NCBI GenBank assembly: GCA_965655095.1
Contig: OZ296648.1
Span: 61,318,001 to 61,382,000, forward strand
DNA: 64,000 nucleotides
Reading direction: 5' to 3'
From: Haplodiscus bocki
Taxonomy: Eukaryota
The notes under the pieces were generated by a model. It was not told the DNA's origin, ran no database searches, and saw nothing but the letters and a program-made list of their open reading frames with translations. Both the position numbers and the translations under genes were made by a program. Every line of letters starts with the position of its first letter. Position 1 is the first letter of the stretch. Below, piece by piece: positions 24,453 through 48,715 of the stretch.

Positions 24453-24955
24453 GTATGACAGTTACCTGCTATTGTTTCAATTGATCTTTAACCTTTTCTA
24501 AATCACTGCGGTTAATTACTGCACAAAATTCAGAAAATAATTGTCAAAGGTAATCAAAATTCGCGTAGCTGGTCATAGGTTATCGTAAGTATCAAAAACT
24601 GCTCTCAGTCTCAGGTTTAGCACTTGTGGTTGAACTTTGTAGAAATAAGCTATGCAAAAAAGTTTCTCATTTTCTCCCCATCAACAGAGAGTGCATCAAT
24701 TCTCATCCCCGAGAGCGCATATTTTTCCGATTAAACTTTTGAAACTTTTGACCTATTGAAAGTAAATCGATTGATTGGTCCATTCTCTATTGATGCGTGA
24801 AAAAGTAAGGCGAGTAAAATTAAAAATAAGTAATGACTAACACGAGGGTGGATAGTATCAACTCAGATGAATGCTCGCTTGAACATGAGATTGTGGGACC
24901 TGATAGCAAGTTTATCGTTCTCACTGGTTGGATTGGTGGTTCAGAAACTATCGCG

Positions 24956-25362
24956 TAGGCATGTGCGATTCAGGGATTTTTTGATCAATTCAATTCCAGT
25001 TCAATTTGAGGGCATGAATTCAAAATCAATTCAATGCAAGGCGTCTTGAAATTCCAAAAATAGTCACGCGGAAAATCACCATTTTATGGATATATTTGCT
25101 TTTACGATTCCCGCCGTAGCTTTCTGCAGTACGTTTGATTCAAAATTTTTAGTTTTTGGATAGCAAATACTAATTTTACGTCGTCTAAATTGTGTCAAAT
25201 CGAAGCACAAAAATTTGTGATACTTAACGGCAATTTTGTTGCCAACAAAAATGTTAACGAATTGAATTGTAAATTTCAATTCGCAACAATTTAGTAAATT
25301 CAATTCAATCCAGGGGAAATAATTGAATTTCAATTCTCAATTCAATGAACCGCACACGCCTA
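24956..25362. mobile_element. hAT-type MITE
   Basis: TIRs TAGGCATGTGCGATTCA / TGAACCGCACACGCCTA; 8-bp TSD CTATCGCG / CTATCGTG (7 of 8 match); AATTC-repeat interior. Confidence 0.8.
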
Positions 25363-25395
25363 CTATCGTGTTCTGATCGCTCTGTGTTACTTCAG

Positions 25396-25611
25396 GATTT
25401 CATTGGTGGTTTGATGAAGATGGAAGAATCGAAAGCGAAAGAGATACAAAAGCATATTTCAACAAATGACCCTTCGGGAACCTCACCAACAGCAACCGGA
25501 GATCAAGATCGGCCGGATACTTCTGACTCAACAACTTCCAGCTACTTGAGTACCCTGACAAAAGAGGACCTCTGCAGTCCCGTTATTTTCGTCAGAAAAT
25601 GGATCGGAGAG
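25396..25611 (+). CDS. TBC-like host gene, exon 12 (DFIGGLMKMEE...PVIFVRKWIGE)
   Basis: TTCAG acceptor, GTAAGT donor, 216 nt, phase 0/0. Confidence 0.9.
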
Positions 25612-27439: not shown

Positions 27440-29100
27440 GTTGGAATCTTAGGAATTTGTATCAAAACTATATAACAATAATATTAAGACTCTTTCGCAT
27501 TTTTGGCCCATCAAGATTCCAATCGACGGATCAAAATCAGAGATTGTTCAATCTCAGAGTCATTTAATATTATACCACCTTCAATTTGGACAGCGAAGGA
27601 AGAGTCATTCATAGCTGTAGTTTTCCAGAAGGATGAGATAGAAAATCGAGATGTGTCTATACTAAGAGCACTTTTAACCAGTTTGGCCAATCAGGTTTCC
27701 GATTCCATTATAAGAAAAACAATTCATCGTTTTTAAGAAAAAAAAGTCCTTTTCAAGTAAAAAACTATCGATTGACAACTTAGTGGAAAAATGAAACAGG
27801 TAGAATTGAAAAATTATGAGTTTAAATATCGAGGTCTGTCAAGACTACCAGCACATTTTGGCACTTCTGGTCCATCAGAAATCCACTGCACGGATTAAAG
27901 TTAACGATTTTCGTATCCAGCTTTAGAACACAGATAAAAAACCTTGATTGAGAGTCTGAAGGAATTAAGTCAGTAGTTTTGAGAAACACGAGTTTGAAAA
28001 TCGAGATGAGTCCATAGTGATTTTGTTTAGCACTTTGACCTTTCTGGATTCCAATACAAGGAACAAAATCGACAATGTTTTAAGCCAGTAATCCTCAAAG
28101 AGTACATACTTTTCGATTGAGACCTTACGGAACAAATCAAGCATTCAGTTAAGGAAAAAGTTCGGTTTGATCAACCAGAGAAATCAAAATATTAGCGCTA
28201 ATCTGAATATTTGGACTATAGGAATTCTGACAAAGGTAATCAACTCAATGAATTTTCAATTTAATAGGCAGCTACAAAATTGGGGTTTTCGATTGAGACG
28301 TTGATGGAAGAAATCAGGCTTCTTAATACGGAGAAAAACGAGTTTAAATAACGAGATAGATCATTATTATTATCACTTTTTCGAAATTTTGAATTATCAA
28401 GATTGCAATGCAAGGAACAAAATCACATAGGTTCAATTGGAGTAGTCTTCCCAAGAAAGAGTATTTTCTATATAGGGTTGGACTGAAGAAAAGACGCCTG
28501 TAGCCATGGAGGCTATGGAGCAAAATGCGTTTGCAGTTCGAGAAGAATCTTTGTTGAAGGCATTTTTCTGAATTTTTGGGTGGTCAGGAGTCTCACACAG
28601 GGAAAAAATTCAATGATTTTTTAAATATCAGTCCACTAGTTTGAAGCTTTGGATTAAGATCTTGATTGAAGAAGTCAAGTCTGTAGCTGCCGAATATAAA
28701 GATTTTGAAATTTGAGATGAACCAGTCCAACTGGCTGCTTTTTGGGAGTTTTACATTATCCAAACTCTGATGCAAGGAACGAAAGAGAAACCTTTCCAAT
28801 CGGATACTCTTCTATAAGTTCAAAGCTGTCGGTGGAAACCCTTACGGAAGATTTCAAGCCTGTATTTGTGAAAAGGTAACAGTTTGGATATCGATATACA
28901 TCACTATAAATATAACTTTTTGGAAATCTTGAACTATCGGAGTTCTGATGCAAGGAATAAAATCAATTTTTCTCCAGCCAAACTTACTGGAAGAATCAAT
29001 TTTGTAGCCATGGAAAAAAAGCTTAAATATCGTGGGAAAACGTTGCAATTACCTTGTTTTTCGGAAATTTATGGTTTATCAGGTTTCTGATGCAACAAAA
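27440..29100. repeat. Degenerate ~175-185-bp tandem array (about 9 units)
   Basis: A GAGTTTGAAAATCGAGAT-like anchor recurs at ~27634, 27818, 27990, 28163, 28340, 28527, 28701 and 28880. Related units occur at ~39480-39830, 49540-49730 and 50390-50720. Confidence 0.7.
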
Positions 29101-30329
29101 TCAATTTTTCTTCAACCGACTCGTTCATTACCTGTAAAAAATTTTCCATTGGGACTTAGGTCAATGAAATATTTTCTGTATTTTTGCAGAAAAGGGAGTT
29201 TCACCTTCAACGAATTTCGGTACCCTGGATTTCTTGGCATTTTCTGAACGTGGAGATCATAAAAGAACATGCTGCAGCGGATACATTTTCGAAAAAAGTT
29301 TTGTATTTTTGGCCCTGATAATTTAGGAAAGTCAAAAGTTTAATGCCAAAAAACTGAAAAAACGTTCAGTTGTTTACATTTATAGTTAAACTTTTTAACA
29401 GAACTATACTTTTTTTGTTTGTTTGGAAAATTGAAAAATTTCGGAAAAGAGTTTTTTCCAGTTACGTCGGAAAACGGATACTTTTTGAGAAAAACAAGTC
29501 GCAGTTGTCAAAACAAACCCTAAAATTCATCAAAAAAATTCTGTTTTTAGCTATTAAAAAGGACAGGACAATGTGTTAACGATCATGTTAAAACAGATGA
29601 AAAGGTTGGTCCATAGAGGGATATAAACCCGCCATCTCTGGCTTCCTAATGCAGACATATGTATTATAGAAGAATTTACAACAATTCTACAGAGACGAGA
29701 AGTCTGCACGTCATGGTCGAAATCAGGAAAAGAGAAAAACTCCGACTACTGAATTGAATATTTTCCTCTCGGAATCTTTTTTCGACAAAAAATAAAAAAG
29801 ATAAGCAGTAGAGATTATTTGTGCTATGCCTTGAGTGATAAGTATTATATACATGATGTAAAAGTTGTGGATTTTTCTAAATTTAGTTACTGACGTTCGG
29901 GAATTTTGAAAAAGGTATGTGGAAAATGAATTTCTTTGTGATAATTTGAACTTCTGCTTAAGCCAAAACTGAAACTGAGGGCCTGTTTGTCTGAATTCGA
30001 AGTTAAAAAGGTGGTGTCACTTCAAATTTTTTCCTCCAATTGTAGTTTTCAAACAGAGCGTGGATCAATATCCGCATCCTTATCGTGACAAAATAAACGC
30101 TATTTGCTCGTGACAAAAACAAAACTCATTTCATAGGCTATTAATTGAATACAAATTTTTAGTTTTTAGATGATATCACGTAATCACTTTGTAGCACTTT
30201 AATGAGGGAAATAACAGCTTCATTTTAAATTAGTTAATTTACAGAGTTTCCGTATAGTACACAATAAATAATTAATCAACGAACTCACGAAAATTCTCCT
30301 TTTCCCGGATTTTTTTCAAGAAGAACATT

Positions 30330-30455
30330 GGGATTTTTTCTGTTAACTCCCCCCCCCCCCCTCACCAGTAGTAACGAGAATTTAACACTCCCCCCCCCCC
30401 TCCCAAAAAAACACAGAAGCAAATTTGTCTCTGGGAAGTTAGCAGAAAAAATCCT
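30330..30455. repeat. Small foldback element with two poly-C tracts
   Basis: GGATTTTTTCTGTTAACTCCC ... GGGAAGTTAGCAGAAAAAATCC inverted ends enclosing C13 and C11 runs. Confidence 0.6.
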
Positions 30456-31222
30456 ACATAACATAATTAATTGAAATTAGAAGATCCATTACAGCACTGA
30501 TTTTTTGCATAATTCGATTAAGTTCAACAGAGTTCTATGACAGGCTAGTCGTTTTTGCTCAATTGCTTTTTTTTCGGTCAGAGATTAATACAAAATTATC
30601 ACGTTAATTGGAAGTTCCTAGGGTTGTAATAAAATTAATTTGGTGCCAGCTTGGTATGTGTCTACATTTCACTTTGTGTTCCGGTATGCGATCTAAATTT
30701 CACGAATGTGTGGAATTTAAGTGACAAAAAAGCTCTCGGCCAAATGTATTTGAGAAAATTGTAACTGCGGAGCACCGGAACAAAAGAGCCGATTTCAACT
30801 AGAGATCGCAAATTTCTGTAGACCGCATACTGGAATAGCGCAATTAATTTATGACGAACAACAGCAATGCTAGAAGTTAGCCAGAACTCAAGTTAGTCCC
30901 AAAATTCAACCAATTACGTCTAAAATGTCAAGAAAATGTCAGTGATGAAACTGTTTTGATTCCGCTTCGAAAACTTCGCGAGAATCCAATAAAGATGATC
31001 GAAGAAAAGATTAAAAATTGACAGTTTTGTTTCAACCAAGTTACTTATCTATAAATTCAAAAATTTTCCTGGTTTAAACTGAAACTAATTAGTTTCAGAG
31101 CAAAAATAATTAACCATCCAAGCTGGAAACTTGTCTAGAACATATGATATTTGCCATTATTAGTCAAACTAGCCTTTTGGCGTTGAAATCTTAAAACAAA
31201 GTTTTTTGGAACTGAAAATTTT

Positions 31223-31951
31223 TTACAACTTTCTTTTGTAAATTGAGAAGCGATTGAAAATGAGAGATGAATAGCGAAGTTTCGCGAACGTTTTGTTCAC
31301 AAAAACAGAGAACAAGATAACAAAAACAGCGTATGTCATTTTATCTAGAAATGGTCTTAGAACTGTTCCGATATCTTTTGCCCCGCTAAGCTCAGATCTC
31401 AAAATTGATTCATTTTTCCAATTACCACTTCCACCTCCGCTTCCATCCCCGCCACCACTTCCACCTCCATGGCTGCTTCCATCGCCACTACTATGGTGTT
31501 CCCCTCCTCCGTGACTTCCAACTCCCCCGTGACCTCCACCTCCCCCATGACCTCCACCTGCCCCGTGACTTCCACCTCCTCCTCCTCCCCCAACCCCACA
31601 GCCACAGGTAGAGCACGCAGACATGGATTTACCCACGGAAACTTTCACTGATGAGGATATTCCCACTTCGGATTTGTCCCATTTTTCTTCCACTTTGAAC
31701 TTAGAAATAACTTGAAGAGACGAATCCATCGTTGCTCTATAGCATTTGGTGGGATCAAATATAGAAAGTGCGCTGCAGCAGCCATGAATTCCTGTAGTCG
31801 TACATTTACTGGATGCTTGAAACTAGGCCGATATTTCGGCTGAAAAGTCAGACCTTGCTGAAGCTGCTACTGCCCCTTCAACTCTGTCGACAGTCAGCCA
31901 AGAAAAGATACACACGGTCAAACTAATGGCGGCAAGCCAGCTTAATCCCAT
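31223..31951 (-). pseudogene. Nested intronless gene A: signal peptide, Cys-containing domain, Gly/His-rich linker, hydrophobic C-terminal segment; single in-frame TAG at codon 43 (null allele, young pseudogene, base error or readthrough)
   Basis: ATG at 31951 is in frame with ORF 31223..31729: MGLSWLAAISLTVCIFSWLTVDRVEGA...SA*FQASSKCTTTGIHGCCSALSIFDPTKCY...CSTCGC(G/H/S repeats)...YAVFVILFSVFV. 242 codons; the only lesion is the TAG at 31823-31825. Confidence 0.75.
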
Positions 31952-34900
31952 AATTTTGTAAAAATGTTGCAGTTAGCCACGTTATTGTTTGAAAGGGTTT
32001 GTCTGTGCAGAAATTGTGTCCTTAGATTTACAGCTTTGTTCTCGTTTTAAAGAGCCCTTCTGCAAAATGATGGATGCATTAACAAAAAGACGCAAAAATT
32101 TTGGCCCCTTCCATGGTGGTTCCGGCAATTTCTTTAATAACCGTTGAGAAATGAAACCAATTCGGTTTTGGTGATTCGTGTTTAATAAAGAATTTCTTCG
32201 CAAAAGTTTGAACGAAGACTCTTTTGGATGAGTCAGAAGGTAAGGTATGTCTTGCAGAATGCTGGTTTCAATGAATGAGGACAACTCAACGGATGCTGGT
32301 TTCAAAGAATGAGGACAACTCAACGGCTGGTGAGATATAATTAACCGAAAAAATTGTTCCTGAATAAAGCGATTTAGATCATTCCAAGATAAATGAGTCA
32401 ATCTGATGTCAACGAAGCACTAAAAACTCTCAGAAAATTTCGGGTTGAAGAAATCGTTGGGCAATTTCATCTCTTTGCATTTCGAATTAGCCAGTTACAG
32501 AAAAAACATCTGATACCAATAAGCGTATGAAATCTCACATCAGCAGCCATCAATGAACTTTCAACCAAACGTTGCCAAGTAAAATTGTAACAGAAAGCTC
32601 CACGCAAAGCCGATTACATGTGGTGAGGTAACCAAGCATGAGCACGTGGTCCGGGATCACAGAAAATTCTCTACGTCCTGAATACTCAGTCAATTTTAGA
32701 ACTCAGGTTTACGCGTAGGTGGGGGATCTGCAAACTCGGGAAACCCACAGCCAATTAAGGTTTAAAACCAATGCCGCAGGATAAACCGATAGTCTAGACC
32801 CGAACACATCTTGTAAAAAAGTTGCCTGTCACAAGGAGATACTAAAGTCTAAAAGTTCTGCATTCTGAGATTGCTCATCGTTAGAGATTGCTCGGTGAGA
32901 GTTCTCATTGTTAATTCATCATTCCTAGATTAAAATAGCCCGATAGTTTAATTAACGTAAAGTTAAATCCTTCGATGATCTCAGATTTTTACTTTCTTCT
33001 TCTATTGTTTGTCTTGTTTTTCCGTGGTCTTCTCTGCGACCCTAAGGCCAGAATGATTTTTTTGGTGAATTGATCTTTTTCGAACACCATCAACATCACA
33101 TCAAACTTTTGACGTCACACATGCAAAACTGTCAAGGCGTCAGAACCTTTAATTACACCACTCCCCGGGTTTGCTCACAATTGTCCTCAGTCCTGGGCAG
33201 TAGACGTGCCAGAGACGTTCATCACAATCCAGTAGGCTTAATTTGTCATCACGAATCAACAAGGGAGATCATGAAAAGTGGCGTCATACCAAGTGTGTTC
33301 CAGAAACACTATGATAAATGGCAATGATGACGCCAAGCATCAGTCAATTTTTTAACCCCTTTTAGAGTTTTCCACTGGTTTTGGTAATTGGACGAACTAG
33401 ATGTCAGTGGCGAGTAAAATTTTCTTCGAGAAGATGCCACTAGCACAGTTACTTTTTAAGTGAAACACTTTCAGCACCATTCAACTTATAAGGACTTCAA
33501 CGGCTGTATAAAGACGTTCTATTCTTATAATTTACACTGGTCTGGTCCTTTCAATAGGTTTTGAAAGGAACTTATATTTTTGTTTTTGCTTTGTCGAACT
33601 AGCTCCCAATTTGGCTATTTCCAAATTCGAATGCTCTTTTTGAGATTTCAGCAGTCTTGATTTCAAATCTCTTTCTGATTGAAATTTTGACTACATGCTG
33701 TAGCATAAACAATTGCTGGTTATAATATCAAATTTCAGATTGATTTCACTTCGTTGAATTAAATAGTACATCTAAACTAAACTAGAATATTCAAGGTGTA
33801 CATAGCAAATAATGCCATTAGACGTTGCTCAACTCGTGAAAAACTGTTTATAAAACCAGAAACTGAAACTTCTCAAGCATTTTGGGGCAGGGGGTTATCA
33901 TGGGAACCAGACTAAGTAAACTATTCCAAGGTTTCAACTTTAGGGAAAACATAAAAACACATTCATAAGTTATATGTATCAAATAATCTAAAAATGTGAC
34001 CTTTAAGCCCAATAAAAGTATAGCGTGAAAAGTCTCTTTAAGAAGCACGTAAGTGGGCCGCATTACAGGCATGAAACATGGGCCAGAAAAAAATTGAGAA
34101 TTAACAGCGGCGAAAAGCACAGAAAAAGACAAAAAAGGTGTGTAAAACATCAAATATTTCCTCGAAACACGTGGAATCTCCCCGTTATTGTCAAATTAAA
34201 ATATAAACCAAAGTGAAAACTGTCGAATAAATGAACCATGAATAACTTCTGTCATTCACTGAATTGTATTTGTTAGTAAATCAACAATAAATTTAGAAAC
34301 TAGCTTTCTGTTTAAAAAATATCGTAAGAACATGAGAATTCGGCTATTTTCGTGGCGAAATAACAATTATTCCACAACGCAATGAAAGTCCCGTTGTAGG
34401 TGTAAAGATCCCAAAGCACATTTTTTGACACAAACTGCATGTCTTCATCGAATTAGTAAAACTATCATCAATTATGAATCCATCGCACATACAGAAAAGT
34501 CAAAGCTATCTGCGTGTTAGAGTTTAAACTGAAAAGAGGAATCGTAGAGCGTGGAATTTTTTTGCCTGCGATTTGACTGGAAATCGGTATGTAGATTGTC
34601 CATTCTAAATAATTAAGATACACTACAAAACTACGTAGATAGCTTTATGTGACCTTGAAATACGGCACTTTAAAGGTCAGGGTAGGGTCAGGAGTCGAAT
34701 TGACTGTTTTGGATTACCTTAAAGTCCAAAAAGACGCTATAAAGCACTTCATTGATGATGTTTTATGTTGAGCGTTTGCTAAGGCATTCTTCGGGTTTAA
34801 AAACCTCCATCATAAATCTCAACTGAAATTGAAAGTTTCTCAATTTCTCAAGTGTTTCAGTCGCGAACCGCAACATGGACGGCCGTTAATGCCTCTAGCG

Positions 34901-36483
34901 GTCTGATTAAGTTTTTTAGCGCTGATATACCAGTACCCGAGCATGCCTATGCAAAAATCATTGATCAGTCAACTGTTTTTCAACAAAGGTTTGAGAAACT
35001 TTCTGTGATGATTGTCGTCCACAGTATTGGCTGACGACAATGGTCTATCCTGCCAGACTGCAAGAAGTTGATTATGTCAAGACATGAACTCTTAGTTCGA
35101 TCCTCAAAAGTTTCGAGTTTTAAAATCTAACAATTTTTTCGGTTAGTTTTTAAGAACGGTCAATTGTCTGGAAAATTTACACTGAAGAAAGTTGCTACTT
35201 TTACAAACAAGCCGGGAACGGTTCAGATTGGCGCAGTCCACATAGTTCAAAATTCTCATCAGACGGAATTGATTTTGATGTTGAAAAAAGTTGTCTTTTG
35301 GCATTTTTCAAGTCTATAATGTAAAAAAACATAGCTTATGCTAAAAGCACCACTAGCCCAAGGAGATACAACATACGCTGAAAATATTTTTTACCCAAAG
35401 TACTAAAGAAAAGAAAAAAACGGAAAGTCTCTGTAACAACCGAGCACTTTCTTGTTACAAGCGCCAACTAAAAACCATGTTATGAAGGTGTTAATTCACA
35501 TTGATAAATGTTCCGGGAAGATTCTTGACGACTATCGAGATTCTTACGAGTCCAGTGAAGTGAATTTTATTTCAGGTGTGAGTGATTGGCTGGTAATCTG
35601 GCCTCTTAACTTGTTTGGAAAGTGTGTTTCCTAATCAGTCTAGACCACTTAAATTTCCATAGTCACTGTTCCTATGACATTCTTTTTCGATGAAATTTAG
35701 CCAAAATTACTATTTGATTGAAGAAAAATCATAGTCATCAAGAACGATCATATCTTCAGTTATCATGAAGACTCGATAGAAGTTCATTTTCGTAGCGTTA
35801 GAAAAATTATGATCTGTCGTTTATTCAGTGCAGTCTTTGACAGAACCACTTTGTTTCAACTAGTTTTGTAAAACTGATCTCTGGATACGCGGACTTTCAG
35901 AAAAATTTGTAGGGATTGTTGACTCAAGAAAAAGTAACTTTTAGAGAACCACCAATGAAATAATTGAAAGCCCTACTTGTTCAAACGTCAAACTGTTTTT
36001 GCATTGTTGCCCTTCAACTAAAAAGATTAAAAAGTGCATTTTACAATCTGGTGCGTTCAAGATCCGTCATCAAGAAGCCCAAACGATATAAAAAGGTCGA
36101 GTAACTTACTAGTCGAAAACAGTCAGCACGTAGCTTTTTGTGTTACCACCAACAAGGGAATGAAGTGAATTGTCTTCTGAGGTACAAAGAAGCATTATTG
36201 CCGCAAGTTGCAACCCAAATGTTTAAGTTAATTTGAAAAATACACAGGCAATGCTAAATGCAACTATTGATCCCTTATCCCTTTGTCAAAAAGAATTAAT
36301 TTGAAAATCTCCAATTTTGAAAAATGAAGGTAGCACAGGAGGTATCTTATTTGATTCCGAAGCACCAGACTTTCTGGATCGAAAAGTTGTTCCAAAAGGT
36401 CAATTTTGTCAATGAAATATCAATATTCGTAGTACCCACCTTCCCTACTCATTACTCCAGCGCCGGCTTAATCAACAACAACG

Positions 36484-36681
36484 AAATTGCCGAAGTAGGA
36501 CCTTCCTATTTTTTCGGGAGATTAGCTTAATTAGGAATCTTTCTTCGATATTTTCAAAGGAGCAGTTGTTAGCAACGCTACACTTCAGGATAACCAAAAG
36601 CTACAATACCTCAGAAAGTCTTTTCAATAGAACGCTACCAAACTTTTGGTATCCGTGATGATCACAGAAACCAATTACAAT
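36484..36681 (+). mobile_element. BEL/Pao retrotransposon gag (DUF1759-like) relic
   Basis: Translates as KLPK*DLPIFSGD*LN*ESFFDIFKGAVVSNATLQDNQKLQYLRKSFQ*NATKLL...ITETNY, the hallmark Pao gag pattern with stops. Confidence 0.8.
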
Positions 36682-39600
36682 CGCTATGCGGAACCTGCGT
36701 GAACTAATGAAAATCGAACGAGAGGCGACATCGCAGTGCATTGATTTCCGTCAAAGAGGTGTCAAAAAGATTGATCAAACGTATAACAAATGATTTTCAC
36801 AAAACTTTTGATTAAAAAGAAAGTTGTCGATTGAGATCTTGTCGGATGAATTCAAGCCTCTGTTTCTCTGTTTGATTTTTTGATTTGTAGTCTTTTATTG
36901 TAGTTACTTGATAAAATGGTTGTATTGCGCTTGCTCAAGCAATGTATCGCCGAATAGTTTCGGAAAATTATGCGTTTGAAAATCAACAAAAAACCTTAAA
37001 AACTCCGCTTTTGGCATTTTCGGCCTATCATGAAAACTCTGTTGATTGTGCAAAACTCAAGGAATTTCGATTCAATGACTCTTCTTTCAGCAGATAAAAA
37101 ATTGTCAAATAATACCTTGATGGAAGAAATCAAAACAAAGTTTATGGAGAAATGAAAAATCGATTTCAGGCACGTTTCAAATTTATTATCATTGTTTGGC
37201 CGTTTTGGACAACCGGGATTCCAACGGAAAGACCAGCATCCATTATTTTTCTGTCGAAAAGTTCTCCTCAAGTAAAGCGTTATCACTTGAACCCTTGATG
37301 AAACAATTGAAGCTCGTAGTTGCTTGCAAATATGTGGTCAGAGACATAGATGTAACTAAAAATCACAAATTCGACATTTTTGGATGTCAAAAATCGAGAG
37401 CGAAGAAAAAACATAAACACTAAGGACCTAGTGCTAGATTTGCGACAAGAGTTTCTCAGAAAGAAAAGAATCGTGCAATCAACTTTCGAATTAACGGTGC
37501 TTCACGAAACTGACATAAACTTGAGTTTTCAGAAAGCATTCAACATAGATCGATTTTGATTTTTTGTTGGAGAAAACCTATCCAAAAAACCACTGAATGC
37601 AAATAAAAAAGAGCGCATGTAACTGCGATGCCAAACCGGCCTCATTTTCATTTCACGCTTTCGGGAATAAAGATCAAAGGTTGAGATAATTTCAAAGAGC
37701 CAATAAATCCCGATCTTGAAATTTGTTTCGTTAAGGAATACTGAAAAATGTTTTGGTGTAGACCCAAAAGCATGAGTAAAAAATGGAGTTTTCTTGTTGC
37801 TGCGTTATTCAAAATATTATGTCTCTTTTTGGACGTTACTGCACTCAAGATGAAGAAGATTATAAAAAAATTCAAATTATTCTTTCGCCGAAAAAAGTAA
37901 CAATTAAATATTGCGACCTCAGCCACAAATTAGTAGATGAACGATTGTGGTCTATTTGTTACGTGATTGGGAAAATTGGATAAGTTTGTGGCCTAATTTG
38001 AAGGACATAGTTCTATATGCCGCATAAAGTTCAAAATAAATGAAAATTGTTCGAATAGCAACTTTGTCTCATTGAAAGGTTTGTTCGAAAAATTATGTAT
38101 TCTCCCTTGTGACTGCCGTCAAACCATTAGAGACAATCGATTAGGTTTTTTTCTGAATCTGTGGGAATTCATTGTTTTTTTTCCGAATTACTTCCGGTGT
38201 ATAGAATTTCAATTTGAAATAAAATTTCAAAAATTTCTTTTTCCAATTTCGTTTCCCAAAAAAGAAATGGCTGTTTACTGACACAGGAATGACTAGCTTT
38301 CATCTCATAAAAAAGAGTCCGTGATTGATATTGTGCAAAATTTCAGTAAATCGACGACTTAGGTTACAAGGTACAAAACTTCGAAATATCAAATATAGTT
38401 GGAACCAAAAAATAATCTCGGTTTAGAAAACTTTTCGACAAAAAACCCAAAAAAAGTTTTCTGCAAGAAATCAAAATTTAACTGTTTAAAAGTTTGTGTT
38501 ATTTTCTGATTTCTGGCAAGTTGATGTTGTTTCTGGGAGTTGCTCTCAGTACAAACTACTAAAAGTCGACGGCATTGGTCAAAAAAGCTCAATTTTGAAG
38601 ATTTGTTTCCAGGGACCTTCATCGGAGAGCGTCGTTTCCGCAACCAAACTAATTTGAGGGATCTGATATTCATGGTTCTTCAGAAGTCAGGTAAAATTTT
38701 GAGCTGGGTGCCAAAGTAACAAATTTGGCATTCACAGAATTATTGGGAATACCCAAAAAGCTCAGTTTTGCAGCGTCTTTGGCAAAAAGACAGATAGAAA
38801 AGTTGTCAGACTACAACTGACGTCTAGTGTATGATAGCAGAGAGTCTTTTAGTTTATGTTGTGTAAAACGTGTGGCTTTTAGAGCCCTATATTTGAAAAT
38901 AAACGACCATTGATAGAACAACTATGTCCAAAGTTTCGAAAATTAGGTTCATTATTGGAATCTTTTTGCAATAAAACTATAGAGAATTCAGGTGGATCGG
39001 AAAAAATCCTACGTTACAGATGAGCCTCGTTTTTCTAACGTTGCTGCAGAAGTTCGTAATTTAGTTGCAGAGATAATGAACTTTCAAAAAAAATTAGTTG
39101 AAAGAAAAAAAAGATCCCTTTAATTTTTCCAGTATGGGTTTGTGAAAAAATTTCGCTTAGGTTTGGTTACTTTTTTCAAAAATGTTGAGTTTTGGAAAAT
39201 TACTCTTCTAGTAAATTTATTCGATCAAGAGGAGCTTTGGAGGAGGAATAAAGCAGGTAGCATTGAAAGAGTTTGAATTTGAATGTTGTAGAATATATTT
39301 AACATCATCATTTTTTAGAGCATTTTGGGACCATCAAGATTCTGACAGAACAACAAAAATCGATAAGTGTTTTTACCATAGTTTTTTAAAAGTAGACGTC
39401 TGATGATTGAGACCTGGATGGCAGCAGTCAAGCGAATAGTTGTTCCGAAATTTTAATTTATTTGTCCAGATGTGTATAACTTAGGAGCAAATTTCGCAGT
39501 TTTTGCGCTATCAAGATTCTTACGAAAGGAAAAGTATTGATAATTTGGCTTCAGGTTAGCCTTTTTTACGTAGAGTGCTCTCAATTGAACTCATGATGTA

Positions 39601-40189
39601 AAAAGTAAAACAGTTACTTTTGAAATAGCATGAGTTTGAAAACCGTGATCTTTATTTGATAATATCCCATTTTGGCATTTTCGGCCTGTCAGAATTTGAA
39701 CGCAAACAAAAACTTCATTGATTTTTCTTGTGAAGAACCCTCCTCAAGTAGGAGGCTGTCAGTTGACATTTTGATGAAAGAATTGAACCACGTTATTATG
39801 GAGAAAATTGAGTGTGAACGTTCAACATAATCCAAATTCAAAGTTCTATATTTCTAGGAAAAATTTGAAAAAAAATATTTTTGTGAAAATTCTTATAAAC
39901 TTTTTCGTACATCATTCAAAAAAGTTCGGCCTCTGAGCGAACTATTTTCATTATGAATTTTTTGGACTCTGAGAAACATTTTTTTGGAGTTTGAGGTAAA
40001 AAGTTTCAGCAGGGTTGTCAAAACTGCATTCTACGTGTCCAGAGGATCATTTTGAGGTTAAAAAACGTGAATATGTTCTCTCCCAAAAGGCAAATCACTT
40101 CGAAAAGAATCTACCTGCTGAAGGAATGATTTTCCTTCAAAAAAAAGTTAAAGCCGAAGCTAATAATGATATTCTGAGTCTACGTACTG

Positions 40190-41450
40190 GCGATCATCAC
40201 AATGACAACTACTCACTGAAGCAGCCCCCGACGTTCGGAATATCCTGGAATTAAAGGAAGAACACCACCTGGTACATGGAAAAATGGAGAACAAGTCGAT
40301 CAAGAAGACTTTTCGTTTACCCTGCCACAGAAGAAATGCTCGCAAAGACTCGCAAACTCTGAACTTTTGACTTTAGGGCGTACCCGCAAACGTACAATGA
40401 CCTCAAGAACTTCCTCGAGCGACAATGTCAAGGCTTGTAAGCCGCCTGTTTCATCTAAACAGGCAATCACCGAAACGACTAGAACCTCAACCATACGCAG
40501 TTACAGTCACGCAGAACCAACTCAATGTCAGTTCCGTTCCCAGCTTGCCACAAAATGCATCCAATGTGATTGTTGCGCTGACCGTCACAGATTTCGTCAA
40601 TGTCCAATTTTTAGGGAGTTACTGTTCCTAACAGAACTCAGGTAATCAGAAGCAAAATCATATGCTTCAATACCTCCGACCCGGACATCGAATCGAAGAA
40701 TGCTCGAAGTCAAATCACAGAACTTGCAGTTTGGAACACAACACACTCCTTCATCCATTGCATGCAAAGCAATGAAGTTAAGGCCGCATCTCAAACTGGT
40801 TCTATCCCGAAGTACACTACTGAGTGACAAGAGGAGCAGCCACAACTTACAACGGCCTCCACTTTTACTCAAAAAGTCAAAAACGGCGATGTTATGTGCA
40901 AACTGCCTTGATTCTGACCTTAGAGGAAGATGAAACTTCCTTCTGCTGTGATTTGCTAGATTCAGGATCGCAAAGTAGCCTCACAATGACTGACTCATGT
41001 CATTCAACAACTTTGCAATCCACAAGAGTTATATGGAACAGAGGACTACAAGGAATCAAAAGTAATCCTTGATACTGAGAATATTTCCTTTGATGCACAT
41101 GCTCTCATGTAACTCTGCAATTTATTCAAATATGATAATTTGTTTATATAATCCATAAGGTTGTATGATGGAAATCAAATTATCAATTGCATTTGAGGGA
41201 AATGAGCATGTTGTACCTGACATAGTTTTGGTTCAAGCGCTGAATTAGGGAAAATGAAGAAAGACACACTGTTGAAGAAGCGTTAATTATAGGAGATTGA
41301 TTGTGGATGGAAGAGAAATTTAGTTTCAGAAGAAACTGTAAATTGTCAGTCTCCTTGGAGACTGATGACTAATCAACTCTAGCTTTCAAGACTTGGGTTG
41401 GTTTTCTTACACTCAGGAGGAAGTATTTGAATTGGCAATTCTGTCAACTG
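40190..41450 (+). mobile_element. BEL/Pao gag zinc-knuckle and protease relic
   Basis: CDCCADRHRFRQCPIF, LCANCL, LLDSGSQSS and a downstream SRLG motif, spread across broken frames. Confidence 0.7.
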
Positions 41451-41755
41451 TAACTTGATAAAACCTTGTTGCAAAATTTTCGCAAATTTCTGTGTATATC
41501 CTAAAATTAACTAATCAAATTTTCACCTGTAACGCGCTAATTTCTGAAATGCTATTTTTTTGGATTTAAATTCTGGTTTCATGAGCTTTCTAACACCTTC
41601 TCTCTCATCTGTTGCCAGTCACAAATCTGTTCACACTACTAGACGAATTCCAGAAAAAGTGCCGCCTGAAAGTTTTGTTTACTGGTTGTGATGATGCGTG
41701 AGAAATTAAAATGTATTCTAGCTAAAAGGTCATGTGATCACGCTATCTGCTTTTT

Positions 41756-42669
41756 AGGCGAGGGGAGCGCAGTCTATTCGCACGAGGACACGTCAAAAGG
41801 ATTTCGTTTTTTTTGCCCGTCCTTGACATCCTTGTGCGTTTCATCTCTTTAAGTCTAATTTTCTCGGGACCTATTGGTCGGATTTATCCTATTTTTGTAT
41901 ATAGACGACGACAGGTTCACGATCTATCATATTCCAAATTTTTGGACCCCGAAAAGAATTTCCGCGAGCTATTAGGGAAAAAAAATTAAATTCTCTGATT
42001 TTTTAGAAGGCAAAGGGTATGATTTTGAGTCCTGTCTTTACAGTAAGCTTAGAAATGCTAATGTTTTTGCACTAATAGATAGAACAGCATTCAGCTGAGC
42101 GGCGTGCGGTGACACTTTTCGTCATTTTTTTCGGCCAGTTTTCGTCAAAAAAAAAGCGAATATTTTTGATTTTTTCTAAAAAGATTTCACATTCCCCATT
42201 GCCCACTGTGTTTCTTAACCTTGAGGCAATTTTTCAACAAATACATCAGTTTCCTTCTTGCTTAGCTGCATTGGCAACGTCGTAATTGACCGAATGCAAA
42301 ATTTTTGGCGGCCGACATTTTTTTCCGGCGAGTTTTTGGCGAAAAGAATTGAAAAGCCAGATTTTTTCAGAGCTCAATGGTTACTTTGTAGCACTTTTTT
42401 GGCCTGATATCCCATTTATGGCATCCCAATTCTGGTTACGCGATGGAATAAAAAGCGTTAGCTGCATTCAGTTTTCAGCCGAAAATTTTCTGATTTTTCC
42501 AAATCATTTCGACCGAAAATTATTATGGAACAAAATGGGTTTTCAAAATTTTTTTTTCAATATATAAATTTTTGCACGTTCAGCATGCCTCAAAGTGTTG
42601 CATGTCACTTCAATTGAGAAACAGACCAAGTAGTGTGTACGGCAGTGAGTTTTGATTGAAGTTTCGCCT
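41756..42669. mobile_element. Possible Kolobok-like non-autonomous element
   Basis: Short inverted ends AGGCGA...TCGCCT with degenerate TTAA-like flanks. Confidence 0.3.
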
Positions 42670-45074
42670 TCAAGTGAACTTTTGTCATGGATACTTTGCC
42701 AAAAAATGGCAAAAAAAGGGTTTCCCTAAGATTTGTCGACTCTTCCAAAAACTCTTTATCCGGTTGTACAAACAATAAATCCGGTTGTAGATGATAGGTG
42801 GTCTGAGCAAAGTATTCTTCAAATGTAGAGCATTTTTTTCAATTGTTTTTTGTGCTTTGCGATAATTTACTACGACACTCACCAGCTGGAAAATTGCCTC
42901 ATGCTTGTGTCTCCTAAAAACCGTAATCATCTTTTGAGTGTTCTTGTGACCTTGGGGTTGCACGAAAAAGCTTTTAATTGAGTTTTCTGTGGAAAATTAT
43001 TTAGAAAACACGGCTTTTTGGGTAGACTTACTGTTTCCATAATCGTATTTTTCTACTTAACAGCCTTTTTTTCAAGTTTTGGAGCCTTGATGCTATGAGA
43101 CGGCATTTGCAAAACAGCAGCTGGTTTCCATTGACTTTGAGATGACAAAGAATTCTTCTTCAGCTAAATTCTGTTTGAAGTTCTGTTAGTTACCCAGAAC
43201 CTCCACTTTTTTTTCTTTGTAGTTCTCTGCTTAATCTCTGCAGATTTTGCTACATGCTTTCTGTCATTTTATAAGCTTGTGGTTAGTGATGTAATCAAGA
43301 GTTTGAGTACCTTCGCCAGTCTTTCGATAAGCACCTTAGCGCCTCGGTTTCTGAAGTTTTGTGGTTCACTATTTGTTTATCACAGAACCGTAATGTTGTT
43401 CGATTAAAACTTGATGAGTTCTTTGATCAAAACGTTACATGATTTATTCCGGAAAAATTCTCCAATACAACTCAATCAAGTAAAGGAACGTATCGTTTGA
43501 AAACTTCCGGAGAAGTTTTTTCGATTTTTTCGTTTCGATTGATAATTCAGGACCACAGAAAATAAAATGGAATTATTTCTGCTTCCTACATTCGGAAAAT
43601 AAATTTATTTGTTGTTGCGTTGAGTGGAAGATTATTTGAGTGAAATCAAGCAAAAAACTTTGGCGACTCACCAAGAACGAATTTTGGCTACAGAAGTTTC
43701 TAAATTTTTGAATTCATTGATACTGTTCTTTATAAACGGCACTAGCGAAAGCATTGAATCGGGCAAACAAGCTTCCTAAATAAATTGTTTACTCTTAATA
43801 GTTGCTTGCTCGATGAGAGCATTCAATCTCGAGTCGTGGTTAATTTTGTATAAAGTTAAAACGTGGGAAAGTATGAACGAAAGTGACAGACAATATTGTG
43901 ATACTTTAGACCCTATGAAAACACTGATACAGTCTCCTAACAATGGTTTCAACAAATTGGTCTTATCGCAGAGTAAAACGCTTTTCAAATGCCATCTATA
44001 CAGTTACAATATGACTTTGAAAAAACAAAACTGTGAAAAAAGACAGAGATTTTCGATTTTTCAGCAATATCCCTTTCTCATTTTGAGGTGTCAAGCACTC
44101 GCAGCGGCCCCGTGGCTTTCTCAGAAGCGAATATGCTTGCTTGAGGCTATCTAAATTGAGACAAACCGATGTTCTTTTCGTTAATTCATTAAGATAGCCC
44201 AAGCGTTTTCATTTCATGTTTACAAGTTATAACATACTTAAAGTGGTAGAAATCGTTGCTGAAGAATAATCTCGCAAGTTGAAGTTTTCAGAAAAGTTTT
44301 GTGACACCCTCAAACTTTTGCGCTCAACGCTCACGAGTCTCAAAAGTCAATAAACATGTTCTCGGCATTTTTAGGTCATTTTAATTTATGATTTGGTGAT
44401 CTGCTAACGCAAATTAAGTGAAAAGTCTGGACATTTGAGACACCTTTGTTGGCAAAGTGAGGTGTCAAATGTTGGTGTCAAAGTGTTTGATTGTTTAGTT
44501 GTAGTTATCCTTGTAGAAAGAAACAATATCCGCACGTTTAAAACAAATTGATTAATTTGACTCCCAGAAAACTTCTATAAATCATCGGAAAACTGAGCTT
44601 TTCAACATTTATCATAACACAGGACTTCAAAACACGAGGGCAACTGTAGTTTCAACTGTTTGCATAACTGAAGGCAACTGCGATGCAAAATCATCATTAA
44701 ATCAGCGAAACACAAGAGTTTTTTTAACTTAAAACTCGCCTTTAAGAGATAAACATTGTTCGCGATTTTTACTGTTCGCAGTAAGAACTCCGATACCTTA
44801 AAAATCAAAAAGTTGTTGAACCATCCGAAAGCTTTTTTCATTTCAATGAACAAAAATCGAAAACTAATTTGCTCCGTTGCTTAGGCTGAAAACTTACTGG
44901 TGGATGAAAATCCGAGGTGGATGAAAATTTGAACTTTTGCTGTCATTTTGCATAATTTTGGAGGAAATTTACGTTTTTTGAATACGAAGAATGCCGTTTT
45001 AATGACCACTGCAAGCGTTTTTATCACTTCTGAGTACGTTATCACAATTTGATATTCCCATCTAATTGTGTTAA

Positions 45075-45300
45075 TATCAGAGCTGACTCAGTGTAAATCA
45101 GCGCTGAATCAGCGCTGAAGTTCAAATTTTTCCGATCAAAGAAAATCAGCGCTGATCAGCCATGATTCAGAGCTGATTCTTTCTGAATCAGTGCTGTTCA
45201 GCGCTGATGTTTTTCAGGTACTCTGAATCAGCGCTGAAAAACGCGAAATCTCTGAAACAGCATTGTTCAATGCTGATTATCTCTGGGACTTTAACCCGGG
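45075..45300. mobile_element. Partial copy (one arm) of the TCAGCGCTGA MITE family
   Basis: Ends in TTAACCCGGG; its reverse complement matches the left arm of 3313-3480. Confidence 0.65.
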
Positions 45301-47021
45301 AAATATTGTTCTATTACTAAAACTTCTCTTCTGACAGTCTTTTTTATGCTCATCAGTTCAACTATATTTTAGAATAGGAATGCTGTTAAGTTGAGATAGC
45401 ATAATCGGTAAGGAACTTCAGCAGAGATTTCATTAAGTTTTTTACAAAGTTCATTGAGGAGACACGACCAATTTTCCAAGCTGAAAACGTCGATTGAATT
45501 AATGAACTTTACTAATAAAGCAATTCCGAAAAAAATCGAAAAATTTGATCAAGGGAGTTTCTTAAAAAATGTTGTGCAAACATTGAAATAAGCAATTTTT
45601 ACCTGAAAAGATCGGTAATTTCAACATTTTAGAATAGTAATGCCACTAAATTATCATAACTTAGTCGGTACGTCAACTGAAAACTTAGTATTTTGAAAAA
45701 AAAACTCAGTGAAAGGTCTAGCATTTTATGGGACAAAACGTCTGACTACTTGATGAAATTTTACTACTCAGTGGGATATTAGGTGGTTCCTAGCACAATA
45801 ATGGCGGAATCAGTTGAATGATTAGCGGTATTGGAACAATAATTGCAATTCAGAGAAAATCAGTTGGCCTAGGACTACGCCATGGATTTTAGTTGACAAT
45901 CATCAAAGACACAAAAAGTTCTTCAAAATTAACTTGGCTGAAATTTGACCAGGAGAATAGAAGAAAAATTCCCATTTTTTTAATAAAAAAGTTGCAGCCT
46001 AGTCAGTCTTGCTTGAAACTATTGTATGCTGTAATAATGTGTACAGGGAAATATTTCAAGAAACATTCAGAAAATTGTTCAGGTTTCCGAATATACATAG
46101 ATAATATAAAATAATTTGCGTGACCAATGTTTCCGTCGTGCTGTTTCACAATAGTACTACTTACTTGTTACATTATTGATGCTTTCATCTATTGTTTGCT
46201 CATAAGTGACGCTGAGTGGCGTAATATGAACTCAGTTTTGACTTCAACTAGTCGAAGATTGTTGTAAAACTGGAAAGTTGTCTGCTACATGTAAAAAAAC
46301 ACTTTGTTTGTTTCTTAATACTTGAAAAGTTTCAAGGATTTGTTCGCATACACATTTTGGAAATAACATATAAAAAGCCGCCAAGTTTTTCAAAGTCCTT
46401 CAAAGAAACTTCGAAATTTTCAACGCAACAGAGAAATTTTAGGCGTGAATCATTGAAAAACATATAAAAAGTTTTAGCTAACATACAAAATTGTACAAAA
46501 AATTCATACAACCTCACTAGAGCTGATTTAGAGAGCTAGGAGACAATCTAAAGGAGTACATTCCGTCTTGAGAGCATTGTTTGTTATAACTTTATGACGC
46601 CAAAACGATGCTTCTTCCTGGTACCAGAAGTAGGCAATGTTTTAGAACTAACCCAATACTCACTTCGAAAGGTTGTTGTTCTCCTGCGACAATCTTCACC
46701 TCATTTTGCATCTCGGTGCAAGAAAAAGGAAACTTGGGCGAGTTTTCAATGCACACTTTTCGATATTACGGATTAATTTTTTGGTAGTTTGTGAACGATT
46801 CGTAGTTTCAAGAATGACCTAAACAAGTTGTTCACAGCTGCTATAAATGTTTCAAACTGTATGGCTCAACAGGTTGACTTGCTAACACTGGGAAAATATT
46901 TCAAAATGAAAGGAAAATATTTACAAAAATTAATGAAAAACAAGAAAAAACTTGAAAAACTAAAAAAATGAAAATGGAAAAATACAAATAGCTATTCCAA
47001 ATTATTGCCGAATTTCATTTT

Positions 47022-47368
47022 TCAACATTGATACTTGAAAAACTCAACTACTATCGATGTGATGTCTGCAAATATGGCGCAATACTTTTTGTCCCACCCT
47101 GCCTCCGCTTTGAAAGAGTTTATAATTTCGACAGACCACTTCATCGTTTTTGAGTAGCACTTGGCAGGGTCAATTTCGTCGGAAACTCCAGCAAATTTCA
47201 ACTTTGTTGGCTCCACATTTATTTCCCCGGTGCCTCAAACGTGGCCGAAAGTCTGGACAAAAAATCCCCAAAGTTTGAAGCTGACGTTGATCTTCCGTCT
47301 GCTTGCTGTACTACTGCGAGCCAGGAAAAAACGAAAGTGAAATTAACGTATGACGACCGTGAAGCCAT
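47022..47368 (-). pseudogene. Nested gene B: frameshifted paralogue of gene A
   Basis: MASRSSYVNFTFVFSWLAVVQQADG...DFLSRLSATFEAPGK*, then shifted frames CGANKVEIC and IDPAKCYSKTMKWSVEIINSFKAEAGWDKK. Aligns colinearly with gene A at FSWL.V, DF...(L/I)SA.F.A..K, DP.KCY..TM..S...I..FK.E..WDK. Confidence 0.75.
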
Positions 47369-48715
47369 TTCTGCTCCACTTGCTTCAAATATATTTTCTT
47401 TTCACAGTAATTTTCGAAAATATCTGAAGTAAACTTCAATTTAAATTTGGCCCGATTTAACCTTTAAGGGCAAAAAAATCACAATTGGAAGAAGAACTTA
47501 GCAAGATATTAATTTTTTATTCATACTTAAATTGACATTTTCACTTCTCGCGCAAAGTTAAGCAATGGACAATATTTCTCTGCAAAATGATTTCCGTTTA
47601 AACTGTTCGCTGATTATTCTGTAGGGTTTAGAAATTTTGCTTAAAATTCCAAGCTTTGCTACGCGGTGTCTCGATTGCATGGTCTTGCTGTTTTTTGAAA
47701 TGATGTGTTTCGATGAGCCACAGACAGAAGTGAAAGCCAAAAATCGAATGGGTTGAAATTTGATACCAAAAAATTTTAGTATGAAATCAAATGGTGTGAA
47801 ATTTCATATCTTTAGTTTCATTCAGAGCTTTCTAAATTCAAAGCTTCATGCCAAAAGCTTTCATTAATTATATAATAGATTCGAATAGAAACTCAAAAAC
47901 ATGGCAAATATCATCTTGATAACTGATAAAAGCCATGGCAAGAGTTACCTTACAAAAAAAGTTTAATATGAAAATTTTTGTCTAATTATCATCGCAAAAA
48001 CTTTAACATAAAATGTACAAAAAGCCAAAAAAGTGTATATCCATATTCAGTATTATAATTTGTCAAAGAGATCTGCGTACTTGTCACTGACTCTTCCAAC
48101 GATTTTGGCAAAACTATTTCTTGAAACAAAATCTTTGAATTATTTGTGAGGCACAGCAAGAATTGATAAAAATTGCATCATCTCTGCATTTCGATGAAGT
48201 GACCATTGATTGACTTTTTTTTGCAATATGCAACTTTTATTGATCCATAGTGTTTTTGTAGTTGCATATTCCAACTTAGATTGAAATATATCGGAAACCC
48301 ACAAGTGAAACAGCTTTCAAAACAGTTGCATTTAATCTGATATTTTTTGCCTTCGGTTTAATTGAACAAGTTTATTTCTCAGATTTTAAAAAAAACCCAA
48401 ATCAAAAAATACTCTCTAGATCTCTAGAACCAAAAAAATCATTCTGGAATTTCATCTAAACCTTCTAAAGCAGGCCTCAGGAAATTTTTGGAACTTTTAC
48501 GTTAACTTTCAAAATAGAAACTGAGCCAAATTTGACCTATATTGGGGTATATAATCTTTCGATTGCATCCACAAAATTGGCCCAGTTTCCAGATAATTTG
48601 TTATTTTTGCATTAATAAATAAACTATTAATTGCAAATAACCGTTCCTTTATTAGTGCAACTAATCAATTGAATGAATTTTCTGCAATGAAGATTTATTA
48701 TGTTTCTCGTGACAG

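What the first reader, a model, noticed from the sequence alone, without database searches (positions are those of the whole stretch)
31223..47368. Unrecognised family of secreted Cys-domain proteins nested antisense in the 23-kb intron of the TBC-like gene
Seen: two intronless minus-strand loci about 15 kb apart, both inside intron 12 (25612-48715), align along ~115 aa. Copy A reads IFSWLTV..VEG / DFSAEISA*FQASSKC / FDPTKCYRATMDSSLQVISKFKVEEKWDK. Copy B reads VFSWLAV..ADG / DFLSRLSATFEAPGK / IDPAKCYSKTMKWSVEIINSFKAEAGWDK. The ORF track shows only their 3' halves, so both the homology and the signal peptides are hidden. I do not recognise the DPxKCYxxTM...FKxExxWDK domain. Inference: a lineage-specific, fast-turnover family of extracellular proteins (surface coat, mucus/adhesive, toxin or symbiosis effector) undergoing birth and death in a host intron.
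Basis: partly seen in the sequence, partly recalled or inferred. Interest (0 to 1): 0.8.

Follow-up and report, generated by a model that had tools for sequence, protein, structure and literature searches.

The report
Orphan signal-peptide ORF pair, mostly broken
Two diverged copies of a small gene-like reading frame with no relatives anywhere sit in one long intron; one copy is dead and the other occurs in the population as intact, nonsense and transposon-disrupted versions, so it is probably a dispensable or dying lineage-specific gene, not a thriving new protein family.

Summary
Two minus-strand loci 15.4 kb apart in a 23-kb intron share a unit of about 93 codons: a signal-like N-terminus plus a region ending FKxExxWDK. 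The protein pieces score z about 6 and 15 above shuffles. In the 1.5-Gb genome each copy is the other's only match.

No Pfam, PDB, PHROG or Rfam hit was found. HMMER over 1.84 billion representative proteins found one protein, and that is an allele of copy A.

- **Copy B** is dead: a TAA stop plus two frameshifts.
- **Copy A** is polymorphic, with three alleles:
  - The reference TAG at codon 43 is a segregating nonsense SNP.
  - Other reads carry AAG (Lys), the only form seen in a second sample. By my inference this gives an open 226-codon allele.
  - A third allele carries a 21.9-kb rearranged Polinton/Maverick that replaces 257 bp right after WDK.

Between alleles, 18 of 19 changes alter the protein or a stop and one is synonymous. 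The locus is no better conserved than the neighbouring intron. The fold model is unconfident (pLDDT 45.5). No RNA data exist.

Verdict: a real, two-member, lineage-restricted ORF pair, most likely a dispensable or decaying orphan gene for a secreted protein. The "Cys-domain family" label and any function remain unsupported. Interest is modest.

The parts
31223..31951 (-). Copy A: single frame of 242 codons plus stop. The reference allele is interrupted by TAG at codon 43.
   Evidence: ATG at 31951 with A at -3 and G at +4 (read from the sequence).
31874..31951 (-). Copy A codons 1-26: signal-peptide-like segment. Hydrophobic core in residues 3-20, then V-E-G before A.
   Evidence: Kyte-Doolittle mean 1.9-2.0 over residues 1-20. 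The -3/-1 residues are read from the sequence. SignalP was not available.
31673..31873 (-). Copy A codons 27-93: the part shared with copy B, ending FKVEEKWDK. Three helices are predicted at low confidence.
31823..31825 (-). TAG nonsense codon 43 of the reference allele. It is polymorphic with AAG (Lys): plus-strand A>T at 31825.
   Evidence: The T allele has depth 11.7 of 41.1 in X1, 10.7 of 30.3 in X2, 6.6 of 11.6 in X3 and 38.7 of 38.7 in X4. The ENA allele P0001 also has AAG.
31417..31672 (-). Copy A linker plus Gly/His/Ser-rich low-complexity stretch. It is encoded by an 18-nt minisatellite and GGN hexamer repeats. It is absent from copy B and replaced by the Polinton insert in the third allele.
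   Evidence: TRF arrays at 31425-31469 and 31503-31585. Homology to the ENA contig stops at 31673 and resumes at 31416.
31223..31416 (-). Copy A tail with a hydrophobic segment (codons about 201-219). It is unique in the genome. The alternative allele ends at codon 226 (Y227 to stop).
   Evidence: All six allele differences here change the protein or the stop. The Polinton-bearing allele also has a 1-base deletion at 31383.
47219..47368 (-). Copy B piece 1: ATG, signal-like segment, DFLSRLSATFEAPGK, then TAA.
47170..47221 (-). Copy B middle piece. It is homologous to SKCTTTGIHGCC of A only in a second frame. Relative to A it has a 4-base insertion just upstream and a 2-base deletion at its end.
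   Evidence: DNA alignment. The protein-level score of this piece alone is not significant.
47022..47216 (-). Copy B piece 3 (third frame): EIDPAKCYSKTMKWSVEIINSFKAEAGWDK plus 21 residues that do not align with A, then stop.

Best explanation
A and B are diverged local duplicates of a taxonomically restricted (orphan) coding unit. The unit is a start codon in good context, a cleavable-looking signal peptide and a roughly 65-residue, probably helical region ending FKxExxWDK.

Copy B is a pseudogene. Copy A is a single-exon ORF. Its intact allele would give a 226-residue protein. That protein would have a signal peptide, the small domain, a Gly/His/Ser-rich low-complexity stalk made by a minisatellite, and a short hydrophobic C-terminal anchor. 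It would be a small secreted or membrane-tethered surface protein.

Copy A is not under detectable protein-level constraint. It segregates in the population as an intact allele, a nonsense allele (the reference) and a Polinton-disrupted allele. It is therefore dispensable and probably on its way to loss.

Shown:
- The duplication and the orphan status.
- The breaks in B.
- The three A alleles.
- The substitution pattern between alleles.

Inferred:
- That the unit was ever translated.
- Secretion and membrane anchoring.
- The single-exon gene model.
For: - Homology is real and confined to the ORF head.
- Each copy's only genome-wide match is its neighbour on the same strand 15 kb away.
- Both copies keep an ATG in a favourable context and a hydrophobic N-terminus despite low identity there.
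- In the DP..WDK stretch, 15 of 28 residues are identical although six of those codons differ synonymously (counted from the alignment). This is a modest sign of past protein-level constraint.
- The TAG is a segregating SNP, and AAG is the only form seen in sample S2.
- S2 unitigs cover 31023-32049 without gaps. Their 6 + 6 + 12 differences are all accounted for by the SNPs shown plus 31759 and 31777 as in L007. That leaves an open 226-codon frame.
- Each allele keeps four Cys in the domain: C59 with Y71 in one, S59 with C71 in the other.
- No TE or viral affiliation: two copies only, and no PHROG or Pfam hit.
Against: - There is no purifying selection. Of 19 allele differences outside the minisatellite, 16 are nonsynonymous, 2 make or remove stops and 1 is synonymous.
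- A-versus-B mismatches are even over codon positions: 44/92, 37/93 and 44/92.
- The locus (92-97% identity between haplotypes) is no better conserved than other unique intron DNA.
- Two of the three allele types are null.
- No AATAAA/ATTAAA or TATA motif lies nearby.
- No RNA run exists for the organism.
- The fold model is poor, pLDDT 45.5.
- The long open frame owes about 85 codons to a stop-free GGN repeat.
- The homology with B, the Polinton insertion point and the start of the minisatellite all fall at WDK. This might mean the true exon ends there.
Confidence: 0.5

Rival explanations
1. The unit was never coding. A roughly 300-bp piece of intronic DNA was duplicated locally. The open frames, hydrophobic starts and Gly-rich tail are by-products of base composition and a GGN minisatellite.
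For: - Allele differences look neutral or worse.
- There is no third-position excess between A and B.
- The locus is not a conservation peak.
- There are no homologues, no confident fold and no RNA evidence.
- Chance ORFs of this size are expected in a 1.5-Gb AT-rich genome once the stop-free repeat is discounted (my estimate, not a tool result).
Against: - Similarity shows at the protein level (z about 15) but not with blastn at word size 9.
- Similarity begins near a retained ATG in both copies and ends at the same codon.
- Both N-termini stay signal-like although only FSWL is conserved.
- Flanks on both sides align only at random level: 39% and 47% identity against 55% inside. Neutral decay of a larger duplicate would not produce that contrast.
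Confidence: 0.22
2. The shared 93 codons are exon 1 of a longer, spliced gene nested in the intron. The Gly/His-rich stretch and tail of A would then be intron or UTR, and the Polinton allele would carry a harmless intronic insertion.
For: - Three independent boundaries coincide at WDK (31673): the end of A/B homology, the Polinton insertion point and the start of the minisatellite.
- The tail shows no coding constraint and has a frameshift in one allele.
- A GT lies 2-12 bases after WDK in A and B (read).
Against: - The candidate donors lie at different offsets and phases in A and B, and are weak.
- No second exon shared between the A and B downstream regions was found by tblastx or local alignment.
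- The Polinton allele lacks the 257 bp that would hold A's donor.
Confidence: 0.18
3. The TAG in copy A is decoded by programmed readthrough or recoding, helped by the small hairpin next to it, so the reference allele is functional as it stands.
For: One frame continues across a single TAG. A 5-bp stem (GCCGA/TCGGC) lies just before it (noted in earlier finding s1-359435).
Against: - The stop is a plain SNP. AAG occupies the codon in other haplotypes of the same samples and is the only form seen in sample S2.
- The hairpin is upstream of the stop, whereas known readthrough stimulators lie downstream (general knowledge).
- The hairpin is present in the AAG allele too.
Confidence: 0.02

Closest known systems
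Taxonomically restricted (orphan) genes for small secreted proteins in invertebrates, with presence/absence or null-allele polymorphism
   Same: - No detectable homologue outside the lineage.
- Short and intronless.
- Signal-like N-terminus.
- Low-complexity tail.
- A local duplicate that has decayed.
- Null alleles segregating.
   Different: Expression and function are unknown here. Only two loci exist, and there is no sign of purifying selection. It may already be a relic and not a working orphan gene.
Gly/His-rich secreted proteins (for example shepherin-type Gly/His antimicrobial peptides and Nereis jaw protein Nvjp-1; recalled from memory, not tested)
   Same: Copy A has a signal-like start followed by a stretch of GGH/GGS-type repeats. 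Such stretches could bind metals or act as a flexible stalk.
   Different: - No sequence homology was found.
- The Gly/His stretch is a young 18-nt minisatellite present only in A.
- It is missing from B and from the Polinton allele.
- It makes up only about a quarter of the ORF.
Genes nested antisense in long introns of a host gene
   Same: Both copies lie on the opposite strand inside one 23-kb intron of a RabGAP-TBC-like gene.
   Different: Nesting is only positional here. No transcript evidence and no regulatory relation to the host gene is shown.
Transposon- or virus-borne ORFs (Polinton/Maverick cargo)
   Same: The only database relative (P0001) lies directly beside Polinton genes: polB, integrase, capsid and an A32-like ATPase.
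   Different: - The Polinton is an insertion into one allele of copy A.
- Its terminal repeat starts at the base after WDK.
- That repeat supplies the last 49 residues of P0001 by read-through.
- The A/B unit itself occurs only twice in the genome.

Membership tests
Any curated protein family or solved structure (Pfam-A, PDB, PHROGs) | A significant profile or sequence match | tested here: not met
   - No Pfam hits at E <= 10 for four pieces.
- No PDB hit at E <= 1.
- PHROG matches only to the low-complexity stretch, at E 0.3-0.6.
- No usable hit from Atlas features.
   - Own genome: only A and B, by single-sequence and profile search.
- 5.8 billion clusters and 1.84 billion representatives returned only P0001, an allele of A.
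- Copy B returned nothing.
- Caveat: unannotated genomes of related animals could not be searched.
Disulfide-rich (Cys) domain | A conserved, even set of cysteines at fixed spacing in all members | tested here: inconclusive
   Three Cys positions are shared by A and B, two of them in B's shifted frame. The alleles differ by C59S and Y71C, so each keeps four Cys at different places. The fold model has pLDDT 45.5 and is not usable.
Sec-dependent secreted protein | N-terminal hydrophobic core of 7-15 or more residues, followed by small residues at -3/-1 | tested here: met
   Kyte-Doolittle mean 1.9-2.0 over A residues 1-20. The motifs V-E-G|A in A and A-D-G|R in B are read. This is a hydropathy and rule-of-thumb check only; SignalP was not available.
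Sec-dependent secreted protein | Demonstrated expression and secretion | not testable with these tools
   No RNA run is on record for the organism.
Protein-coding gene under purifying selection | An excess of synonymous over nonsynonymous change between alleles or copies | tested here: not met
   One synonymous change of 19 between alleles, with P(<=1) = 0.02-0.05 under neutrality. A-versus-B mismatches are even across codon positions.
Transposable-element or Polinton ORF | Many genomic copies, or a constant position inside an element | tested here: not met
   The unit has two copies only. By contrast, the Polinton terminal repeat next to P0001 gave 67 matches from 8197 first-look candidates, many in inverted pairs 16-18 kb apart. 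The flanking repeats at 30638-30840 and 32585-32873 belong to unrelated short dispersed families.
Programmed stop-codon readthrough | A stop codon fixed and conserved, with coding constraint downstream | tested here: not met
   TAG alternates with AAG within and between samples. There is no constraint downstream.
Structured RNA (Rfam) | A covariance-model match at A or B | tested here: not met
   No match at either locus at E <= 1 over 30500-47800.

The most novel reading that the evidence does not exclude
The intact allele of copy A encodes a working, very fast-evolving orphan surface or secreted protein. It would have a helical four-Cys head, a metal-binding Gly/His stalk and a membrane anchor. 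It would be kept polymorphic (intact, nonsense and Polinton-disrupted alleles, with dN above dS) by balancing or diversifying selection, as seen for immune or symbiont-recognition molecules.
Probability: 0.12. Interest if true: 0.55.

Novelty: new member of a known kind. Interest (0 to 1): 0.25.

Why it matters
If the intact allele is expressed, this locus shows an orphan gene close to its end. One gene carries three allelic states: intact, nonsense, and disrupted by a virus-like Polinton. A dead duplicate sits next door. That makes it a usable case for studying how lineage-specific secreted proteins are lost. It would also be a usable case for asking how they are kept polymorphic.

If it is not expressed, it is a cautionary example. 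A long ORF with a signal-like start and a paralogue can persist in intronic DNA without being a gene. Either way it does not define a new protein family of general importance.

Tried and rejected
- **A larger segmental duplication around A and B.** blastn and tblastx of 12 kb around each copy gave extra matches at 27.8-28.4 kb against 50.2-50.4 kb. That stretch is a dispersed repeat with thousands of candidates genome-wide, so it is not part of the duplication.
- **A sits inside a split transposon.** The read laying joints 30390/30757 to 32607 suggested this. The two flanking repeats belong to different short dispersed families and the joints have 22-31-base sides. Rejected.
- **The P0001 tail (after WDK) or the copy A hydrophobic tail is homologous to the copy B tail.** The P0001 tail is the Polinton terminal repeat. 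A tail against B tail is not significant: 1749 of 5000 shuffles score as high, and the DNA comparison is also null.
- **Copy A is a conservation peak between haplotypes.** A first look suggested so. The full profile shows many intron windows at 92-97% identity. Rejected.
- **Fold recognition.** AlphaFold2 on the 5-row alignment gave pLDDT 45.5. No fold search was run because a low-confidence model gives meaningless matches.
- **Expression.** No RNA run is listed. The four runs that hold the stretch have no library kind on record, so neither transcription nor strand could be assessed.
- **Second copy in other data.** The word search with copy B found nothing, so the state of B in other haplotypes is unknown.
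- **Source of the ENA assembly.** A paper search for ERZ26859043 found nothing.
- **Organism identity.** Not established.
Full report
**What is there**

Copy A lies on the minus strand at 31223-31951. It is one frame of 242 codons broken by a single TAG at 31823-31825. In order, it reads:
- A hydrophobic N-terminus (residues 1-20, Kyte-Doolittle mean about 1.9-2.0), followed by V-E-G|A.
- A roughly 65-residue stretch ending FKVEEKWDK.
- A linker and a Gly/His/Ser-rich stretch encoded by an 18-nt minisatellite and GGN hexamers.
- A tail with one more hydrophobic segment.

Copy B lies at 47022-47368 on the minus strand. It has the same head, but it is cut by a TAA (47219-47221), a 4-base insertion and a 2-base deletion, so its three homologous pieces lie in three different frames.

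Both copies lie inside a 23-kb intron of a plus-strand gene. The donor follows 25612 and the acceptor AG is at 48714-48715. The next exon weakly matches the end of RabGAP-TBC (E 0.011, below the cut-off).

**Is the similarity real?**

Yes.
- The two protein pieces score 45 and 88 against shuffle means of 20.7 +/- 4.1 and 22.6 +/- 4.3. None of 5000 shuffles reached either score.
- tblastx gives a summed E of 4e-8.
- In six-frame searches of the whole 1.5-Gb genome, each copy finds only itself and its partner. A profile built from both finds nothing further.
- That the sole genome-wide match lies 15 kb away on the same strand is itself strong evidence of a local duplication.

The homology is confined to the ORF head:
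- DNA identity is 55% from the ATG to WDK, against 39% upstream and 47% downstream, which is the level of forced alignments.
- The middle piece (SKC...GCC) is not significant by itself.
- The tails after WDK do not align.

**Relatives elsewhere**

No relatives were found:
- Pfam-A, PDB sequences, PHROGs and the ESM Atlas features gave nothing.
- Rfam gave nothing at either locus.
- The word-index search found one protein, P0001 (142 aa, ENA assembly ERZ26859043).
- Exhaustive HMMER over 1.84 billion representatives found only P0001 again.
- Copy B found nothing.

**P0001 is an allele of copy A, not a relative**

Its contig (L007, L008, L009) is collinear with the window from about 24.3 to 44.0 kb. 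Identity is 82-94% over blastn blocks and 92-97% in unique stretches.

Over codons 1-93 it differs from the window at 13 bases, one of which turns TAG into AAG.

Directly after WDK the contig carries about 21.9 kb of Polinton/Maverick-type DNA:
- It encodes a protein-primed polB, an rve integrase, a double-jelly-roll capsid domain and an A32-like ATPase.
- The first 921 bases of the insert are a terminal repeat. In the window's genome it gave 67 matches, many in inverted pairs 16-18 kb apart, and some of them reach the insert's first base.
- The last 49 residues of P0001 are therefore read-through into that repeat.
- The insert has only one such terminus and an internal 5.2-kb duplication at 99.1% identity.
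- It replaces window 31417-31672, which holds the linker and the Gly/His stretch.

**The stop codon is a polymorphism**

Contigs of four public runs of the organism were laid on 30000-33500. They show plus-strand A>T at 31825, which is TAG to AAG:
- Depth 11.7 of 41.1 in X1.
- Depth 10.7 of 30.3 in X2.
- Depth 6.6 of 11.6 in X3.
- Depth 38.7 of 38.7 in X4, which is a second sample.

The accompanying SNPs are the very ones that separate L007 from the window. The ENA contig is therefore another haplotype of the same species or of a very close relative.

In X4, unitigs 31023-31344, 31315-31782 and 31753-32049 carry 6, 6 and 12 differences and no gaps. I infer that the two unlisted differences in each of the last two unitigs are 31759 and 31777, as in L007. 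Every difference is then accounted for.

That would leave a haplotype with AAG, no Polinton and an unchanged Gly/His stretch. It has five tail substitutions and an earlier stop (Y227 to stop), giving an open 226-codon allele. This assumes the three unitigs belong to one haplotype.

At least three allele types therefore exist: nonsense (the reference), intact, and Polinton-disrupted. The last also has a 1-base deletion at 31383.

**Selection**

- Outside the minisatellite, the alleles differ at 19 sites. Sixteen are nonsynonymous, two create or remove a stop and one is synonymous.
- With 22-27% of random changes expected to be synonymous, P(<=1 of 19) is 0.02-0.05. There is no purifying selection and, at most, a hint of dN above dS.
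- A-versus-B mismatches are spread evenly over codon positions: 44/92, 37/93 and 44/92.
- The A locus is 92-97% identical between haplotypes, no more than many other intron windows.
- In favour of past protein-level constraint, 15 of 28 residues in DP..WDK are identical although six of those codons differ synonymously.
- Both copies also keep an ATG in a good context and a signal-like start.
- Each allele of A keeps four cysteines in the domain by different means: C59 with Y71, or S59 with C71. This last point is anecdotal.

**Other gene features**

- No AATAAA/ATTAAA motif lies within about 500 bases downstream of the stop, and no TATA[AT]A motif lies within 450 bases upstream of the ATG.
- AlphaFold2 on the small alignment predicts three helices, but at pLDDT 45.5 and pTM 0.29. 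No fold comparison was attempted.
- No RNA run is listed for the organism, so transcription, strand and splicing are untested.

**Interpretation**

The most likely reading (about 0.5) is a lineage-restricted, intronless gene for a small secreted or membrane-tethered protein. It was duplicated locally. One copy has been lost to frameshifts. The surviving copy is dispensable, with null alleles common and no constraint visible.

The rivals are:
- A never-coding duplicated intron fragment (about 0.22).
- Exon 1 of a longer spliced nested gene (about 0.18). This is prompted by three boundaries coinciding at WDK: the end of A/B homology, the Polinton insertion point and the start of the minisatellite.
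- Programmed readthrough of the TAG (about 0.02). The AAG allele argues against this.

**Novelty and score**

Orphan ORFs with signal-like starts are common in invertebrate genomes. What is slightly unusual here is the documented three-state polymorphism, including a Polinton allele. I rate it a new member of a known kind, with interest about 0.25.

Noticed in passing
L007:10280 onward, through L008, to L009:6726 (replaces window 31417-31672): One haplotype carries a roughly 21.9-kb Polinton/Maverick-type insert directly after the WDK codon of copy A. It encodes polB, an rve integrase, a DJR capsid domain and an A32-like ATPase. It has only one terminal repeat and is accompanied by loss of 257 bp of host DNA.
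   Followed up: partly
L009:9466-14703 and L009:15768-21005: An internal 5.2-kb direct duplication at 99.1% identity inside that Polinton-type insert. It repeats a block of three called genes of 64, 132 and 443 residues.
   Followed up: no
window 45095-45212 (+): A weak H/ACA snoRNA-like match to SNORA69 (34.7 bits, gathering score 47, E 0.007). It is sense to the host gene inside the same intron and could be an intronic snoRNA.
   Followed up: no
window 31673 (the WDK codon of copy A): Three independent boundaries coincide here: the end of A/B homology, the Polinton insertion point in another haplotype and the start of the Gly/His minisatellite. This is unexplained. It may mark an old exon end or the end of the duplicated unit.
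   Followed up: partly
window 31740 and 31777 (codons 71 and 59 of copy A): The two alleles differ by C59S and Y71C, so each keeps four cysteines in the domain at different positions. This could be compensatory or chance.
   Followed up: no
window 24250-44000 against L007/L009: Haplotypes differ by 3-8% even in unique intron DNA, and by 20-28% over 28.0-29.5 kb and 34.0-34.5 kb. The species is very heterozygous, or two close lineages are being compared.
   Followed up: partly
window 27750-28450, 30234-30467, 30638-30840 and 32585-32873: Short dispersed repeat families with hundreds to thousands of genomic candidates flank copy A. One of them explains a spurious 27.8-kb against 50.2-kb similarity.
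   Followed up: yes
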